This document shows positions 3,499 to 35,959 of a DNA stretch of 36,992 bases, piece by piece. The stretch is from the NCBI RefSeq assembly GCF_001194135.2, contig NC_068987.1, forward strand, positions 58,969,329-59,006,320, read 5' to 3'. This DNA comes from Octopus bimaculoides. Lineage: Eukaryota. Both the position numbers and the translations under genes were made by a program. The stretch's first letter is position 1, and every line of letters begins with the position of its first letter. The notes below the pieces were generated by a model. That model did not search any database, was not told the DNA's origin, and was given only the letters and a program-made list of their open reading frames with translations.

Positions 3499-4003
3499 TT
3501 TATTCATTTTTCGATTCCTCTGTCAGATATGGCAGAAATCATTAAGCAGATTCCTTTGATATTGACATTCATCCTTCATATAACTGAAAATGACCAGATT
3601 AGCAGCTTTACTGTTTGTGGATTCTGAAGCGGCTTGTTAGGCCATTATTGCCATAAAATCCACAGTTACAGTTGGAGTACCTAGCAGTCGAAGCAAGACC
3701 TGGTGAGTATCTTGTTTTCCGTGCAACTTTCTTATCTTTAGTTTCTCCTTTTCCGATCATTTATTGAGCGCTGATGTCCAGAGCATACAGTACTTCGCCA
3801 CATTGAGCAAGATATTCCCAAGATATACTCATAATGAAATAAAGAAGTGTAAAACAATTACTCTGACTCTTCATAAAGTACTATAATATAAATAGCTGTA
3901 TTTTTGAAAAGGAGGAATTTTTAAAAACGTCCCGAAGACAGACAATGAATATTGTATACTCAGCGAATCAAGTGTTTCTTTTTAATATAGACAAAAGAAT
4001 AAC

Positions 4004-4288
4004 ACCCCACTTCGGTCATGAATGACCATGGGATTACACCTAGAAAGTTACTCTTCGAAGCACAAGTCCGGGCAAGGTTGTTTATGGAAAACGAGCAGTC
4101 ACCCATGCATACCAGCTTTTCCTCTCCATGCCACCGATGTTGTCCAAGCGAAACACAGCTGAATGAACTGGAGCAACGAGAGATAAATTGTCTTGCTCAA
4201 GAACACAACACAGCCCGGTCCGGAAATCGAACTCACTACCTCACGATTGTGAACCTGACGCTCTAACCACTGAGCCATGCGCCTTCAC
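4004..4288 (-). mobile_element. tRNA-derived CORE-type SINE family S2, internally deleted
   Basis: Homologous to 20068-20402. Head GGCGCATGGCTCAGTGGTTAGAGCG...GTTCGATTTCC; lacks about 70 bp of the middle. Confidence 0.85.
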
Positions 4289-4889
4289 TATATATACACA
4301 AATAGAGACATATCAAATATCTTACAATATAAATTTAAACATTTATTAAAATTATCTCCGTCTCTAGAAGATGTATCATTGTTACTATATGACAATTAAG
4401 ACCAGCTTCACTTGAGAAGCAGAGATAATCTCAAGATTCAAGAATTCTTCAAAGTCGACATTAAAGAAACGGACACGTTTAATGGTCTAGAAATGAGAGA
4501 ACAGTTGTGGACGCTTTAATAGCCGTCATCAGTACGACAATTACCCGACTTTATCTCCTGTAGGCAAAGGACAACAGTTGTTGAGTTGACAAACAATCCC
4601 ATTCGAATTAGTTTAAGCATTCATTTCATTCGGGCTGATTAACACACGGTTGTCAGTTAAATCGTCTACAAGAGTGCTTCTCAAACTTTTTTTTAACATA
4701 ATTGTCCTTTGTCTTTTACTAACATCATTTCAAATCCGTCCTTGCAACGATTCATGCCATAGTAATTTAGTTCTGGATTCTCACTACATCACACATCACC
4801 GCCACATTGCATCACATCACCAGATGCAACTAAACACGTGACCACACTAGAACACTAACACTTACAACCAATCAATGCATTATTGTACT

Positions 4890-8358: not shown

Positions 8359-8643
8359 GCTACTGTATGTATGTATATATGTATGCAAATGCATACATTT
8401 CTGTGTATAATNNNNNNNNNNNNNNNNNNNNNNNNNNNNNNNNNNNNNNNNNNNNNNNNNNNNNNNNNNNNNNNNNNNNNNNNNNNNNNNNNNNNNNNNN
8501 NNNNNNNNNNNNNNNNNNNNNNNNNNNNNNNNNNNNNNNNNNNNNNNNNNNGCTACTGTATGTATGTATATATGTATGCAAATGCATACATTTCTGTGTA
8601 TAATACACATACATATGTGTGTACGTATATATGTATATATATG

Positions 8644-10442: not shown

Positions 10443-10935
10443 AAAGGCGTCAAGCTGGCAGAATCGTTAGCAGCCCGGACAAAATGCTTCTAAGCATTTT
10501 GTCCGTCTTTATGNNNNNNNNNNCCGACGAAATGCTTAGCGTTATTTTATCCGTCTTTACGTTCTGAGTTCAAATGCCACCGATGCCGACTTTGCCTTTT
10601 ATCCTTTTGGGGTCGATAAAACAATGTACCGTTTGAGTACTAGGGTCGATGTAATCGACTAGCCCTCTCCATCAAAACTTCAAGCCTTGTGCGTATCATA
10701 GAAAAGATTAATTATACTTCTGTATGAAGCGGGAACTAGTAGAATCATTACCACTCCCGACGAAATGCTTAGCGTTATTTTATCCGTCTTTACGTTCTGA
10801 GTTCAAATGCCACCGATGCCGACTTTGCCTTTTATCCTTTTGGGGTCGATAAAAAAGTACCAATTGAGTCGATGTAATCGACTTCAATACCTTTCAAAAT
10901 AACTGGCCTTGAGCCAAAATAAGAAAGGATTAATT
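10443..10935 (+). mobile_element. S3 SINE copies around a 10-N gap
   Basis: Head at 10443, body at 10524-10715, second copy at about 10725-10935. Confidence 0.85.
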
Positions 10936-18830: not shown

Positions 18831-18893
18831 AGCCTAAATCAAAGAGAGAATAATACAGAACTACTTCATCATATATATATATATATATATATA

Positions 18894-19392
18894 GCTGATC
18901 AAAAAGTATCCAATCTGTTCAATAAGTATCCGGCCTGTTGCCATAGTAACAAAGCTAAAGTACGTAGAGTAAAGCCACTTGGCACAGATTGACCTTGAAC
19001 TCTGCAGTGTATGCACACCAAGTTTCAACGTTCTAGCTCACTTCCGCTATTTACAGCAGTGCTTGAAAGGAAGGTATGTAGCGTGTGACCATCGCAATGA
19101 ACACGACAGAGAGGGTTGAGCAGAGAATCTGCATCAAATTTTTCTAAAAACTAGGCCATACCTGCTCAGAGGCTTGCGCAAAGTTTTCGAAAATTTTCAT
19201 CGTTCTCGATAGAATCAAGGAGATCATGTGCAATTGAAACCCGAGTGTCTTTTTGGTCAGCTGAAAGCAGTTATGGCACAAACTTGGCAGACACGCGTCT
19301 CATACCCAGATCTTCAGTGATAATGCATTGAACTGAACAGTAACTAATCTGCACATCCTCGGATAACTCACGAATGGTGATTCGACATGACA
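18894..19392. mobile_element. Second, truncated copy of the same rearranged mariner
   Basis: Same left end. Plus strand: MNTTERVEQRICIKFF*KLGHTCSEACAK. From about 19185, minus-strand transposase: RITIRELSEDVQISYCSVQCIITEDLGMRRVSAKFVP*LLSADQKDTRVSIAHDLLDSIENDENF (HTH plus the mariner WVP-equivalent FVP linker). Confidence 0.88.
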
Positions 19393-23624: not shown

Positions 23625-24192
<568 letters not shown>

Positions 24193-25496: not shown

Positions 25497-25679
25497 CTTG
25501 GCTGTCTCTCGCTAGTGAGGCAAGTTTGATAGCTTTTAACTAGCGTTCGCAAGTTATTTTAGACCCCTCGGAAGTATCCTTAATTCAGCGGAACATCGTG
25601 TACGTGATAGATGGGTGAAGGGGGCTGCACCAGTACTCTACTGTAACACATTTGAAGCTAAGTAAGTTAGAGCAATGAG

Positions 25680-25780
25680 AAACGATGCTTTGCTCTAAGA
25701 CAAAACTTGATCCAGGAATCGAACCCATGATATATTCGTGAGCTCTACCCTGTAACCAGTAAACCACATGACTTCACTTT
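25680..25780 (-). mobile_element. Degenerate tRNA-SINE head (S2-like)
   Basis: The reverse complement has GTGGTTTACTGGTTA...GGGTTCGATTCCTGG. Confidence 0.5.
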
Positions 25781-25796
25781 CACAAACACATACATA

Positions 25797-26357
25797 CGTA
25801 GTCTGATCAATAAATATCCGAAGTGTTGCCATAGTGACAAAACTAAAGTACGCAGAGTGAAGCCGCTTGGCACAGATTGACCTTGAACTCTGCTGTGCAT
25901 GCGCACCAAGTTTTAACGTTCTAGCTCACTTCCGCTATTTATACCAGTGTTTGAAAGGAAGGTGTGTAGCGTGTGATCGTCGCATTGACCATGACAGAAA
26001 GAGTTGAACAGAGAATTTGCATCAATTTTTTTCCAAAAGCTTGGCTATACCTGCTCAGAGAGCTACGCAAAGTTTTCAAAAGAATTTCATCGTTCTCGAC
26101 ACATACACTTTCTGCAATTTTACCTGAGTCTGAGCAGGTATCGCCATGACAACTTTCACTGTCATGGTCATTGCGACGATCACACGCTACACACCGTCCT
26201 TTCAAGCTCTGCTGTAAACAGCGGAAGTGAGCTAGAACGTTGAAACTTAATGCGCATACACAACAGAGTTCAAGATCATTCAGTGCCAAGCGGTTTCACT
26301 GCGTGCTTAGGCTTCGTTACTATGGCAACAGTCTGGATACTTATTGATCAAACCTAG
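25797..26357. mobile_element. Non-autonomous mariner-derived fold-back element (two 5' ends), TA target-site duplication
   Basis: TA|CGTAGTCTGATCAATAAATATCC ... GGATACTTATTGATCAAACCTAG|TA. Imperfect inverted arms of more than 200 bp. The left arm carries ATG 25991 encoding MTERVEQRICINFF/QKLGYTCSESYAK (mariner transposase N-terminus, one frameshift). The right arm is an inverted, internally deleted copy of the same 5' region. Confidence 0.88.
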
Positions 26358-26371
26358 TACATGTTATTAGA

Positions 26372-26950
26372 TTAATACGTCTGTCGTTGTCGACAATGAC
26401 CAAGGACATCATCTGGGCAAAGAAGACCGGACACGGTGTGAGTGGCTGTGGTCAATCAGTTCAACACCTCCTTGGAAGACTGCTGCAGGTTGGGCACTGG
26501 TGGGACTCAACGCAAAGTGTTGGCTCTGGACTTGCACAGTTCGCGTTTTCTTGGTGCCCCTGCAATCCTGTTCAGTCTGTAGAAGGTGGCACCTCTGTTG
26601 ATGCATCTGTGCCAAGCAGGACTGTCTTGCGCTTGCGTTTCCCAGATGTTGGGGGCTGATCTTAAAGCTCTTCACTGAGATTTTGAATGTGTTCTCGAAA
26701 CACTTTTTCTGTCCACCTTGCGTAAAACAGTCGCTTGGGAGTTGCATGTTGGCATTCGAACAAGGTGGCTTGTCCACCTGACTTGGGCTATCCTTAGCTG
26801 TGTGTAAATGCTTGGCAGAGCAGCTCAAGAGAAAACTCTTGTATCTAGGATCGTGTCTTGCCAGGTGACTCAACAGCTTTCTCGTGTAGTTCATGTGGAA
26901 GCGGTTTAAGTTTTTGGCGGGGCGTTCTTAGATCTGTGCATCAACGGTCT
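26372..26950 (-). mobile_element. RTE/BovB-type LINE, 5'-truncated 3' fragment with frameshifts
   Basis: Across frames: AKNLNRFHMNYTRKLL / VTWQDTILDTRVFS*AALPSIYTQLRIAQVRWTSHLVRMP / QGGQKKCFENTFKISVKSFKI / WETQAQDSPAWHRCINRGATFY / HQCPTC / LIDHSHSH, followed by a short RTE-like 3' UTR. Confidence 0.88.
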
Positions 26951-34891: not shown

Positions 34892-35104
34892 CTTTGGACG
34901 CAAAAATTTAATCTTGCTTTTGTTGGGAACAGATCCCTTTGAATATAAAGATGTTAAGGAAGGTGGGAACGAGCTGTCCACAAATAATTTTTCTTTTGCT
35001 AGACATTCATCCTTAATTGTTTCATAAGTGATTCCTCGTTGCATAACATCTTGTCCCGGTTCGAAAACCCCCTGACCGGCTTTTTTAGAACCACAACACG
35101 CCAT
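34892..35104 (-). CDS. Calpain (Ca2+-dependent cysteine protease family), first coding exon, 71 codons, phase-0 donor
   Basis: ATG at 35104 in an A-rich context (CAAAAAATGG). Translation: MACCGSKKAGQGVFEPGQDVMQRGITYETIKDECLAKEKLFVDSSFPPSLTSLYSKGSVPNKSKIKFLRPK, then GTAAGT. The YxxIKxECLxxxxLFxDxxFPP...RP pattern matches the start of the calpain catalytic region, and an intron directly after the (W/F)xRPx motif matches classical calpain gene structure as I recall it. Orthologue not assignable. Confidence 0.87.
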
Positions 35105-35359: not shown

Positions 35360-35959
35360 GTGCGCACACACACACACACACNNNNNNNNNNNNNNNNNNN
35401 NNNNNNNNNNNNNNNNNNNNNNNNNNNNNNNNNNNNNNNNNNNNNNNNNNNNNNNNNNNNNNNNNNNNNNNNNNNNNNNNNNNNNNNNNNNNNNNNNNNN
35501 NNNNNNNNNNNNNNNNNNNNNNNNNNNNNNNNNNNNNNNNNNNNNNNNNNNNNNNNNNNNNNNNNNNNNNNNNNNNNNNNNNNNNNNNNNNNNNNNNNNN
35601 NNNNNNNNNNNNNNNNNNNNNNNNNNNNNNNNNNNNNNNNNNNNNNNNNNNNNNNNNNNNNNNNNNNNNNNNNNNNNNNNNNNNNNNNNNNNNNNNNNNN
35701 NNNNNNNNNNNNNNNNNNNNNNNNNNNNNNNNNNNNNNNNNNNNNNNNNNNNNNNNNNNNNNNNNNNNNNNNNNNNNNNNNNNNNNNNNNNNNNNNNNNN
35801 NNNNNNNNNNNNNNNNNNNNNNNNNNNNNNNNNNNNNNNNNNNNNNNNNNNNNNNNNNNNNNNNNNNNNNNNNNNNNNNNNNNNNNNNNNNNNNNNNNNN
35901 NNNNNNNNNNNNNNNNNNNNNNNNNNNNNNNNNNNNNNNNNNNATATATATATATATAT

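What the first reader, a model, noticed from the sequence alone, without database searches (positions are those of the whole stretch)
25797..26357. Fold-back mariner with two 5' ends: a mobile, Mu-killer-like hairpin source
Seen: both arms are the element's left end plus the transposase start, facing inward, with intact TA-flanked TIRs. The arms pair over more than 200 bp, far beyond a normal ~30-bp mariner TIR, and the junction is shared with the 18.9-kb copy. Established: maize Mu killer is an inverted duplication of a MuDR 5' region whose hairpin transcript silences the family in trans. Inference: read-through from the calpain intron, or the two convergent element promoters, would give a long hairpin covering the TIR, promoter and first codons. 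Such an element could spread using the family's transposase while producing siRNA/piRNA against it, or act as an ADAR sink.
Basis: partly seen in the sequence, partly recalled or inferred. Interest (0 to 1): 0.72.

Follow-up and report, generated by a model that had tools for sequence, protein, structure and literature searches.

The report
Old fold-back mariner transposon remnant
This is a decayed 561-bp jumping-gene remnant built from two inward-facing copies of a mariner transposon's front end; the structure is real and its origin can be reconstructed, but the suggested role as a silencer of its own family could not be tested.

Summary
Window 25797-26357 is a TA-flanked 561-bp element. Both ends are the 5' end of one mariner family: TIR, 5' UTR, ATG and about 28 codons, facing inward. 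The arms match over 206 nt at 84.5% (E 4e-61), and over about 255-278 nt if one 32-nt gap is allowed. Normal relatives are about 1.3 kb and collinear, with TIRs of only about 27-30 nt, so the long arms are a rearrangement.

Origin: the 5' region (to codon ~28) is joined to an inverted internal segment (codon ~125, "ENDENF") at a built-in inverted microhomology. This gave a long fold-back form of roughly 0.85 kb, an estimate. A truncated copy of it sits at 18896-19387, and an 855-bp TA-flanked copy lies in the spider Araneus ventricosus. A second deletion gave the 561-bp form. The flanks of the two window copies are unrelated, so the element transposed.

It is old (arm K2P 0.22; six shared perfect 21-mers). 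RNA from either strand would fold into a long imperfect hairpin (about -330 kcal/mol, z about -27). Transcription and small RNAs could not be tested. Fold-back Tc1/mariner MITEs of this origin (Goblin) are already described. Verdict: new member of a known kind; the Mu-killer-like role is untested speculation.

The parts
25795..25796 (.). TA target-site duplication, left
25797..26074 (+). Short arm. A copy of the mariner 5' end: TIR (about 25797-25826), 5' UTR, ATG at 25991-25993, and about 28 codons (MTERVEQRICI...).
   Evidence: It aligns with normal 5' ends: L001 297-557 at 77%, L003 1-143 at 84%, L007 88-359 at 74%.
26075..26103 (-). Central 29-nt piece. This is an inverted fragment of the transposase gene around codons ~119-128; the reverse complement reads C V E N D E I L L. 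Junction 1 lies at 26074/26075 and junction 2 at about 26103/26104.
   Evidence: It matches the reverse complement of the internal site of normal copies (L005/L006/L008 TGTGTCGAAAACAATGAAAAC..., L007 TGTGCCGAGAACGACGAAAAC...). It also aligns in A2. BLAST: FB 276-307 against L005 1958-1927 at 84%.
26104..26357 (-). Remainder of the long arm. An inverted copy of the 5' end: TIR (about 26328-26357), 5' UTR, ATG at 26163-26165 on the minus strand, and codons to about 33. It carries a 32-nt internal deletion relative to the other arm.
   Evidence: L001 298-490 matches 26353-26150, and L001 529-571 matches 26142-26102. See also alignments A1 and A2.
26358..26359 (.). TA target-site duplication, right
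18914..19185 (+). Second copy, short arm. It holds the 5' end through codon ~28 and has the same junction 1 as the 561-bp element.
   Evidence: 86.6% identity to FB 6-303; alignment A1.
19186..19387 (-). Second copy, inverted internal transposase segment. The reverse complement reads RITIRELSEDVQISYCSVQCIITEDLGMRRVSAKFVP*LLSADQKDTRVSIAHDLLDSIENDENF. This is the long-arm part of the longer fold-back form. It is truncated at about 19387 by microsatellite-like sequence.
   Evidence: ORFs. L001 711-875 matches 19387-19223 at 85%. L005 1754-1958 matches at 81%.
18896..18913 (+). Extra 18-nt TIR-tip copy (GCTGATCAAAAAGTATCC), directly outside the TIR of the second copy and next to a (TA)n tract.
   Evidence: Sequence. 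It matches the 5' end region (TA tract plus TIR) of the Bradybaena locus L005 and the 3' TIR of L003.
34892..35104 (-). Context: a calpain-like first coding exon (MACCGSKK...KFLRPK, with GT immediately after). It lies upstream of the element in the direction of transcription, so the element is probably inside this gene's first intron.
   Evidence: All 17 PDB sequence hits are calpains, aligned to their residues ~12-70; best E 8e-4. Pfam gave no hit. No further calpain exon was recognised by eye in the minus-strand ORF list.

Best explanation
The element is a non-autonomous, rearranged derivative of a mariner (Tc1/mariner) transposon. In effect it is a MITE with about 255-278-bp inverted arms made from two copies of the element's 5' end.

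How it formed (inferred from the junctions): while a copy was being synthesised, most likely during gap repair, the growing strand reached ...GAAAACTTTCTGAAAAC (codons ~125-128). It then switched to the complementary strand of its own 5' region, where a 12-13-nt imperfect inverted match exists (GTTGCAGAAAGT, codons ~28-31). It copied back out to the 5' TIR. This produced a long fold-back: 5' end to codon ~128, followed by an inverted 5' end to codon ~28. I estimate its length at roughly 0.85 kb. A second short-homology deletion in the long arm (codon ~33 to ~119) produced the 561-bp form.

How it moved: both ends carry a valid TIR, so family transposase supplied in trans cut and pasted it into TA sites. 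The TA duplication and the two unrelated insertion sites are shown. The source of the transposase is inferred.

Today it is an old, decayed fossil that probably lies in intron 1 of a calpain-like gene. Any RNA made through it would fold into a long imperfect hairpin. The most likely present function is none.
For: The inverted repeat and TA flanks are real.

Both arms are the 5' end of the family. This is shown against normal collinear copies L001, L003/L004 and L007.

Normal relatives are about 1.3 kb with short TIRs. L003's 3' end shares only 26 nt (92%) with the FB right arm and 27 nt (89%) with L007's 5' TIR. The intact Bradybaena element L005 encodes a 351-aa transposase with Pfam HTH_48, Transposase_1 and DDE_3, and its TIRs of about 30 nt were read from the sequence.

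Junction 1 is shared by the FB and the 18.9-kb copy. The spider fold-back L002 3658-4512 has the same internal-side breakpoint.

The inverted microhomology is present in normal copies.

The flanks of the two window copies are unrelated.

Age: arm-to-arm K2P is 0.22, and FB to the second copy is 0.16.

Hairpin potential: -326.5 and -341.3 kcal/mol, z -27 and -26.

Precedents: Goblin formed by template switching plus microhomology from a Tc1/mariner element (PMC3814204). Mariner elements with two identical ends transpose in vitro (PMC4505599).
Against: Only three fold-back copies were seen, so family size is unknown.

No parental copy from the same genome was available. The host organism could not be named, and the normal copies come from other samples.

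The order of events (long form first, then deletion) is inferred from shared junctions only.

'No present function' is a default, not a result. Expression and small RNAs could not be examined.

The spider copy's arms group with each other rather than with the window arms. A single origin does not predict this.
Confidence: 0.75

Rival explanations
1. One reading: a mobile, Mu-killer-like source of hairpin RNA. Read-through from the host gene, or convergent transcription from the two 5' UTRs, gives a long hairpin covering the TIR, promoter and first codons. Small RNAs processed from it would silence the mariner family in trans.
For: The architecture matches the published Mu killer description: two TIRs from the transposase-adjacent end and partial transposase copies in inverted duplication (PMC3440606).

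A very stable hairpin is predicted from either strand.

The element probably lies in an intron, so it would be transcribed with the host pre-mRNA.

Read-through transcripts pairing through inverted repeats are a recognised source of transposon dsRNA, described for Tc1 in C. elegans (review PMC3878927).

The arms would have been identical when the fold-back formed.
Against: No transcript or small-RNA evidence could be obtained.

The fold-back lineage was mobilised repeatedly after it formed. Active transposase therefore persisted alongside it.

The arms are now 16-19% diverged and share only six perfect 21-mers. There are no shared 21-mers with relatives L003, L007 or L002.

No Rfam family reaches threshold. 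The only match is a structural echo of MIR8562, at 41.6 bits against a gathering score of 211.

The arm divergence (0.22) is about the same as between two normal copies, L001 and L003 (0.22). Nothing shows that family activity stopped because of the fold-back.
Confidence: 0.12
2. The long fold-back form acted through protein rather than RNA. It keeps only codons 1 to ~128, which encode the N-terminal DNA-binding part of the transposase without the catalytic domain. It could therefore have made a truncated protein that occupies TIRs or poisons transposase dimers. This would resemble the P-element KP repressor (own knowledge) or mariner dominant-negative complementation. The 561-bp element would be a further-deleted dead descendant.
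For: In the 18.9-kb copy the open frame stops 7 codons after the junction (...IENDENFRKLCASL*).

In the spider copy the annotated protein P0001 ends exactly at the junction (...ADNEENF*).

The break lies just before the catalytic domain's start (ITGDE...) in normal copies.

Against: All three copies now carry stops or truncations. The 561-bp element lacks this coding part altogether. No expression data exist. The position of the break is explained well enough by the inverted microhomology alone.
Confidence: 0.05
3. Assembly or library artefact: a chimeric fold-back read assembled as a palindrome.
For: Palindromic chimeras are a known sequencing artefact (own knowledge). The assembly has N gaps elsewhere in the window.
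Against: Artefactual fold-backs have identical arms. These arms differ at 16-19% of sites and by a 32-nt indel. The same junction is present at a second locus. The same internal breakpoint is present in an independent assembly of another species. No gap lies within about 1.9 kb.
Confidence: 0.02
4. Two separate mariner copies landed head-to-head, one beside or inside the other. Later deletions removed everything between their 5' regions.
For: Mariner inserts at TA, and nested insertions are common (own knowledge). The 18.9-kb copy carries an extra TIR-tip fragment at its outer edge.
Against: No TIR or TA remnant lies in the centre. Instead there is a 29-nt inverted piece from codon ~119-128. 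The same junction recurs at a second locus in this window, which needs a single rearranged ancestor in any case. At least two exact deletions would be required, against one strand switch.
Confidence: 0.04

Closest known systems
Goblin, a Stowaway-like MITE derived from the Tc1/mariner element Ozma in Aedes aegypti (Yang et al. 2013, PMC3814204)
   Same: It is a non-autonomous Tc1/mariner derivative. Both subterminal regions come from the same end of the autonomous element, in inverted orientation and with unequal lengths. The junction lies at short inverted microhomology. The proposed origin is template switching during gap repair. The autonomous parent has only short TIRs.
   Different: Goblin's arms are 54 bp and come from the 3' subterminal region. 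Here the arms are about 255-278 bp, come from the 5' end, and include the 5' UTR, the start codon and about 28 codons. Goblin is a high-copy family; copy number here is unknown.
Mu killer of maize (Slotkin et al.; described in PMC3440606)
   Same: It is an internally deleted, partly duplicated DNA transposon. Both TIRs come from the transposase-adjacent end, and two partial transposase copies meet in an inverted duplication. It sits next to or within host transcription.
   Different: Mu killer belongs to the Mutator superfamily and is a single plant locus with about 1.3-kb arms. It has genetically demonstrated dominant silencing and documented transcripts. Here the superfamily differs, the host is an animal, the arms are about 0.25 kb and decayed, the element is itself a transposed multi-copy unit, and no silencing, transcript or small RNA has been shown.
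MADE1 (Hsmar1-derived palindromic MITE), source of the human mir-548 family (PMC1784062)
   Same: It is a mariner-derived non-autonomous element that is essentially a palindrome. When transcribed it folds into a hairpin that can enter a small-RNA pathway.
   Different: MADE1 is small, essentially two mariner TIRs around a short core (details from own knowledge). It arose as a simple internal deletion with 6-bp microhomology (PMC3814204). It contains no duplicated 5' UTR or coding sequence. Its miRNA products are documented; here no Rfam family reaches threshold.
Read-through dsRNA from Tc1 inverted repeats in C. elegans (reviewed in PMC3878927)
   Same: The proposed route to dsRNA is the same: a flanking promoter reads through a Tc1/mariner element, and the inverted ends pair within the one transcript.
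   Different: In Tc1 the pairing is between the element's normal short TIRs, and it is tied to genetically defined RNAi silencing. Here the pairing region is a rearrangement five to ten times longer, and nothing is known about RNAi in the host.
Drosophila Foldback elements and Galileo (long-TIR 'foldback' transposons; Galileo: PMC4168063, seen only as a search listing)
   Same: They have long inverted arms that fold back, and many copies are non-coding.
   Different: Their arms are built largely from tandem subrepeats, and their target duplications are longer than 2 bp (own knowledge). Here there are no tandem repeats, the duplication is TA, and the termini are mariner TIRs. The element is not a member of those families.

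Membership tests
mariner family (Tc1/mariner superfamily), as a derivative | TA target-site duplication | tested here: met
   TA at 25795-25796 and 26358-26359. The spider fold-back is also TA-flanked.
mariner family (Tc1/mariner superfamily), as a derivative | Terminal inverted repeats of about 28-30 bp that match those of coding family members | tested here: met
   The termini CGTAGTCTGATCAATAAATATCC and CTAGGTTTGATCAATAAGTATCC align with the TIRs of L001, L003 (3'), L005 and L007 (...CTGATCAAAAAGTATCGG...).
mariner family (Tc1/mariner superfamily), as a derivative | Internal sequence derived from a mariner transposase gene (HTH_48 N-terminus plus DDE/DDD catalytic domain in the parent) | tested here: met
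   The arms carry the ATG and first ~28 codons, with a weak HTH_48 hit at E 0.039. The relative P0013 (351 aa) has HTH_48, Transposase_1 and DDE_3, with 78% identity over the aligned N-terminal ~190 residues of a hand-built family consensus. The catalytic triad spacing was not examined.
MITE with both ends from one end of the parent (Goblin-type fold-back MITE) | Short, non-coding, TIR- and TSD-bounded | tested here: met
   561 bp. It holds only two ~28-33-codon transposase starts and a 29-nt inverted fragment.
MITE with both ends from one end of the parent (Goblin-type fold-back MITE) | The subterminal regions of both ends come from the same end of the autonomous element, while the parent has short TIRs | tested here: met
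   Both arms are the 5' end. Parent-type copies share only 26-30 nt between their ends.
MITE with both ends from one end of the parent (Goblin-type fold-back MITE) | Junction at inverted microhomology | tested here: met
   The 5' site GTTGCAGAAAGT and the internal site ACTTTCTGAAAAC are present in normal copies, and the crossover lies at ...GAAAAC|TTTGCG....
MITE with both ends from one end of the parent (Goblin-type fold-back MITE) | High copy number with homogeneous members | not testable with these tools
   The host genome is not searchable here. Only 2 copies in the window and 1 in a spider were seen. A junction scan of JGI metagenomes found 0.
Mu-killer-like trans-silencing locus | Inverted duplication of the transposase-adjacent TIR plus the 5' part of the transposase gene | tested here: met
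   definition in PMC3440606.
Mu-killer-like trans-silencing locus | Transcription across the inverted duplication, giving hairpin or antisense RNA | not testable with these tools
Only the folding potential was computed.
Mu-killer-like trans-silencing locus | Small RNAs from the arms and dominant, heritable silencing of autonomous copies | not testable with these tools
   No read data and no genetics. Indirectly, the fold-back lineage kept transposing after it formed.
Drosophila Foldback / Galileo-type foldback transposons | Long arms made of tandem subrepeats, and a target duplication longer than 2 bp | tested here: not met
   No tandem repeats in 25700-26450. The duplication is TA.
Annotated hairpin RNA gene (miRNA precursor family) | Match to a curated RNA family at its gathering score | tested here: not met
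   Nothing at gathering threshold in the whole window. The only match is MIR8562, at 41.6 bits against 211 required.

The most novel reading that the evidence does not exclude
This mariner lineage carries a built-in 12-13-nt inverted microhomology. It would repeatedly turn copies into fold-back elements that keep two usable ends and the 5' UTR and start region. Fold-backs with the same internal breakpoint occur in this host and in a spider, and their arms group by host. That pattern would fit recurrent birth of such elements. They would spread on the family's transposase while feeding long hairpin RNA (or, in the long form, a DNA-binding-only protein) back against it. This would be a self-generated brake on the family, an animal counterpart of Mu killer that is itself mobile.
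Probability: 0.1. Interest if true: 0.7.

Novelty: new member of a known kind. Interest (0 to 1): 0.35.

Why it matters
As it stands, this is a clean worked example of how a cut-and-paste transposon turns into a long-armed fold-back MITE. Both rearrangement junctions are readable, and the predisposing inverted microhomology is visible in normal copies. A longer form survives truncated in the same window, and an 855-bp fold-back with the same internal breakpoint lies in a spider genome.

It would matter more if small-RNA data showed that such elements seed silencing of their own family in an animal. That would link MITE birth directly to the shutdown of a DNA transposon family. It would also explain why the break falls where it keeps the 5' UTR and start codon in both arms. 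Nothing obtained here shows that.

Tried and rejected

Other fold-back copies:
- The 116-aa junction-spanning ORF had no homologues.
- An exact look-up of the 161-aa ORF just right of the element, meant to find orthologous filled or empty sites, returned nothing.
- A junction-specific pattern scan of JGI metagenome contigs found 0.

Naming the host:
- A chimeric calpain-plus-transposase query was swamped by 2372 mariner hits.
- The exhaustive representative search with the calpain exon gave only 3 weak hits at 33-38% identity, and these carried no organism names.
- Run and metagenome accessions are not in the paper library.

RNA families and repeats:
- Rfam and ARAGORN on the window found nothing at threshold. 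The sub-threshold MIR8562 match was rejected as a generic long-hairpin echo.
- Tandem subrepeats in the arms, as in Drosophila Foldback elements, were not found.

Segmental duplication between the 18.9-kb and 25.8-kb loci was rejected, because their flanks share no similarity.

A single origin of the spider and window fold-backs was considered but left open. The breakpoint agrees, but the arm distances do not fit.

Full report

Yes. Window 25797-26357 (561 bp) is bounded by TA on each side, at 25795-25796 and 26358-26359. Removing the element and one TA restores a continuous (CATA)n-like site.

The two halves are inverted copies of each other:
- The repeat finder reports arms of 151 nt (87%) and 55 nt (80%).
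- BLAST joins them into 206 aligned nt at 84.5%, E 4e-61.
- With one 32-nt gap, the pairing extends to 25797-26074 against 26104-26357.

No assembly gap lies near the element. The arms differ at 16-19% of sites, which rules out a fold-back sequencing chimera.

**2. What are the arms?**

Translating the second copy at 18.9 kb revealed a mariner transposase fragment on the minus strand...RITIRELSEDVQ...LGMRRVSAKFVP*LLSADQK...IENDENF. Homology searches with it, and with a family consensus, returned mariner transposases. DNA was fetched for several of them:
- L001 (a Logan contig) is a normal collinear 5' half.
- L003/L004 are near full-length degenerate copies with a 3' end.
- L007 (a JGI contig) has a normal 5' end and an ORF.
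- L005 (land snail Bradybaena similaris) is an intact element encoding a 351-aa protein with Pfam HTH_48, Transposase_1 and DDE_3.

Both arms of the 561-bp element align with the 5' end of these copies: TIR, 5' UTR, ATG and the first ~28-33 codons. The start codons are at 25991-25993 (+) and 26163-26165 (-), facing inward.

**3. Does the parent have long TIRs?**

- The 3' end of L003/L004 shares only 26 nt (92%) with the FB right arm.
- It shares 27 nt (89%) with the 5' TIR of L007.
- In the intact L005 element the two ends share about 30 nt (CGAGG..TGATCAAAAAGTATCGGAACTTT), read directly from the sequence.
- Beyond the TIR, the 3' end is the transposase C-terminus and 3' UTR.

The long arms are therefore a rearrangement, and the refutation condition is not met.

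**4. Anatomy and origin**

Alignment A2 places the 561-bp element, the 18.9-kb copy and a spider locus against normal copies. Up to ...GAGAACGATGAAAAT (E-N-D-E-N) all agree. After that, normal copies continue into the catalytic domain (ITGDE...). The three rearranged copies instead continue with an inverted 5' end.

Junction 1:
- In short-arm orientation it reads ...GCGCAAAGTT|TTCGAAAATTTTCATCG..., at 26074/26075 and 19185/19186.
- Normal copies carry a built-in imperfect inverted repeat at exactly these two places. The 5' site is GTTGCAGAAAGT (codons ~28-31). The internal site is ACTTTCTGAAAAC (codons ~125-128). They share 8 perfect bases plus AAC.
- A strand being extended through ...ACTTTCTGAAAAC can therefore re-anneal on the complementary strand of its own 5' region and copy back out to the 5' TIR. 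This yields the observed ...GAAAAC|TTTGCG... junction.
- The product is a long fold-back: 5' end to codon ~128, followed by an inverted 5' end to codon ~28. I estimate it at roughly 0.85 kb.
- This step is an inference from junction sequence. It is the mechanism proposed for the mosquito MITE Goblin (PMC3814204).

The two window copies:
- The 18.9-kb copy (18914-19387) is this long form. Its long arm is truncated at codon ~60 by microsatellite-like sequence.
- The 561-bp element has the same junction 1 and keeps 29 nt of the inverted internal segment (26075-26103; the reverse complement reads C V E N D E I L L).
- It then jumps to codon ~33 of the long arm (junction 2, in long-arm orientation ...GCAGAAAGTGTAT|GTGTCGAG...).
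- It is therefore a deletion derivative of the long form.

**5. Was it mobile?**

The two window copies have unrelated flanks, and the 561-bp copy has a clean TA duplication. The rearranged lineage therefore transposed after junction 1 formed.

Mariner transposases act on elements with two identical ends in vitro (PMC4505599):
- Mos1 with two right ends is 26 times more active than the natural arrangement.
- Mos1 with two left ends is 50 times less active.
- Mboumar-9 with two left ends is twice as active.

A two-5'-end element is thus a plausible substrate. Its efficiency in this family is unknown.

**6. The spider copy**

Protein P0001 (Araneus ventricosus) led to locus L002. There, an 855-bp TA-flanked element (3658-4512) has a collinear long arm: 5' UTR, ATG at 3853, and an ORF through ...ADNEENF, ending at a stop on the junction. 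It is followed by an inverted 5' end. The evidence for the inverted end is:
- an inverted repeat, 3806-3872 against 4310-4376, at 84%;
- FB 47-131 matching L002 4475-4393;
- the two spider arms being 66.5% identical over 233 nt.

The internal-side breakpoint is the same as in the window copies to within about 3 nt. On the 5'-arm side the spider copy lacks about 13-16 nt.

The distances are unexpected. The spider arms are closer to each other (K2P 0.46) than to any window arm (0.55-0.71), while the window arms are 0.16-0.22 apart. One origin without arm homogenisation predicts the reverse. The possible explanations are:
- recurrent strand switching at the built-in microhomology;
- arm-to-arm gene conversion;
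- noise at about 60% identity.

This remains unexplained.

**7. Age and present state**

- The arm-to-arm K2P of 0.22 equals the distance between two normal copies, L001 and L003 (0.22). The copies called L001 and L004 come from one sample.
- Every copy of the lineage that shares this 5' UTR and was translated here (window copies, L001, L003) has stops or frameshifts.
- The arms now share six perfect 21-mers, and the longest perfect run is 24 nt.

The element is an old fossil.

**8. What could it do?**

RNA from either strand would fold into one long imperfect hairpin:
- plus strand: -326.5 kcal/mol, z -27.4;
- minus strand: -341.3 kcal/mol, z -26.4.

The only recognisable host exon is a calpain-like first coding exon at 34892-35104 on the minus strand. 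All 17 PDB sequence matches are calpains, with best E 8e-4. Pfam gave no hit. No further exon was recognised by eye downstream of it in the window. The element probably lies in a long first intron and would be transcribed as the minus-strand hairpin. That is inference.

Rfam has no family for it.

**9. Comparison with known systems**

- In architecture the element matches the published description of Mu killer (PMC3440606).
- In origin it matches Goblin-type fold-back MITEs (PMC3814204).
- In potential RNA behaviour it resembles MADE1/mir-548 (PMC1784062) and Tc1 read-through dsRNA (PMC3878927).
- It is not a Drosophila Foldback or Galileo-type element: it has no tandem subrepeats and its duplication is TA.

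Membership in 'mariner-derived fold-back MITE' is met on every feature that could be tested. Membership in 'Mu-killer-like silencer' is met only on structure.

One alternative way of acting applies to the long form only. It retains just the DNA-binding N-terminus and stops 0-7 codons after the junction. It could have made a dominant-negative protein. This is also untested.

**10. Verdict**

The functional half remains speculation, and is mildly disfavoured for two reasons. The fold-back lineage kept moving after it arose, and the element is now heavily decayed. The kind of element is already described, so novelty is modest.

The two points of real interest are the fully readable two-step origin at a built-in inverted microhomology and the reappearance of the same breakpoint in a spider genome.

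Interest 0.35.

Noticed in passing
L002 3658-4512 (Araneus ventricosus BGPR01000366.1, GCA_013235015.1): An 855-bp TA-flanked fold-back mariner in a spider has the same internal breakpoint (...ADNEENF) as the window copies. The annotated hypothetical protein AVEN_270597-1 ends exactly on the junction. Its two arms are closer to each other than to the window arms, which a single origin does not predict.
   Followed up: partly
window 18896-18913: The 18.9-kb copy has an extra 18-nt TIR-tip fragment (GCTGATCAAAAAGTATCC) directly outside its own TIR and next to a (TA)n tract. It may be a tandem duplication of the TIR tip or the footprint of another element end.
   Followed up: partly
window 18871-18895; L005 about 1210-1293; L007 about 66-82: Three copies of this mariner group, in three different sources, sit immediately next to (TA)n microsatellites. 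This fits TA targeting, or TA-tract growth at insertion sites.
   Followed up: no
window 34892-35104 (minus strand): A calpain-like first coding exon (MACCGSKKAGQ...KFLRPK, followed by GT). PDB sequence matches are all calpains but weak (best E 8e-4). Pfam gives no hit, and the closest proteins in the 1.84-billion-protein library are only 33-38% identical. The host calpain appears poorly represented in public protein sets.
   Followed up: partly
window 8412-8551, 23738-23873, 35382-35943 (also 10-nt runs at 10514, 11753, 34141): Assembly gaps (runs of N) lie inside CA/TA/ATAC-type microsatellite tracts. The window is very rich in such tracts, so local lengths there are unreliable.
   Followed up: no
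window 25935-26221, both strands: There is a sub-threshold Rfam match to the plant miRNA precursor family MIR8562 (41.6 and 37.5 bits against a gathering score of 211). It most likely reflects only the long-hairpin shape.
   Followed up: yes
window 26409-26927 (minus strand): A 161-172-aa open frame lies 50 nt to the right of the element. It has no Pfam match, no exact record in the gene-position index, and no second copy in the window. Its nature is unknown.
   Followed up: partly
window about 25640-25775 (minus strand): Just left of the insertion site there is a tRNA-like stretch containing GGTTCGATTCCTGG, suggestive of a tRNA-derived SINE. ARAGORN calls no tRNA, and no second copy was found in the window.
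   Followed up: partly
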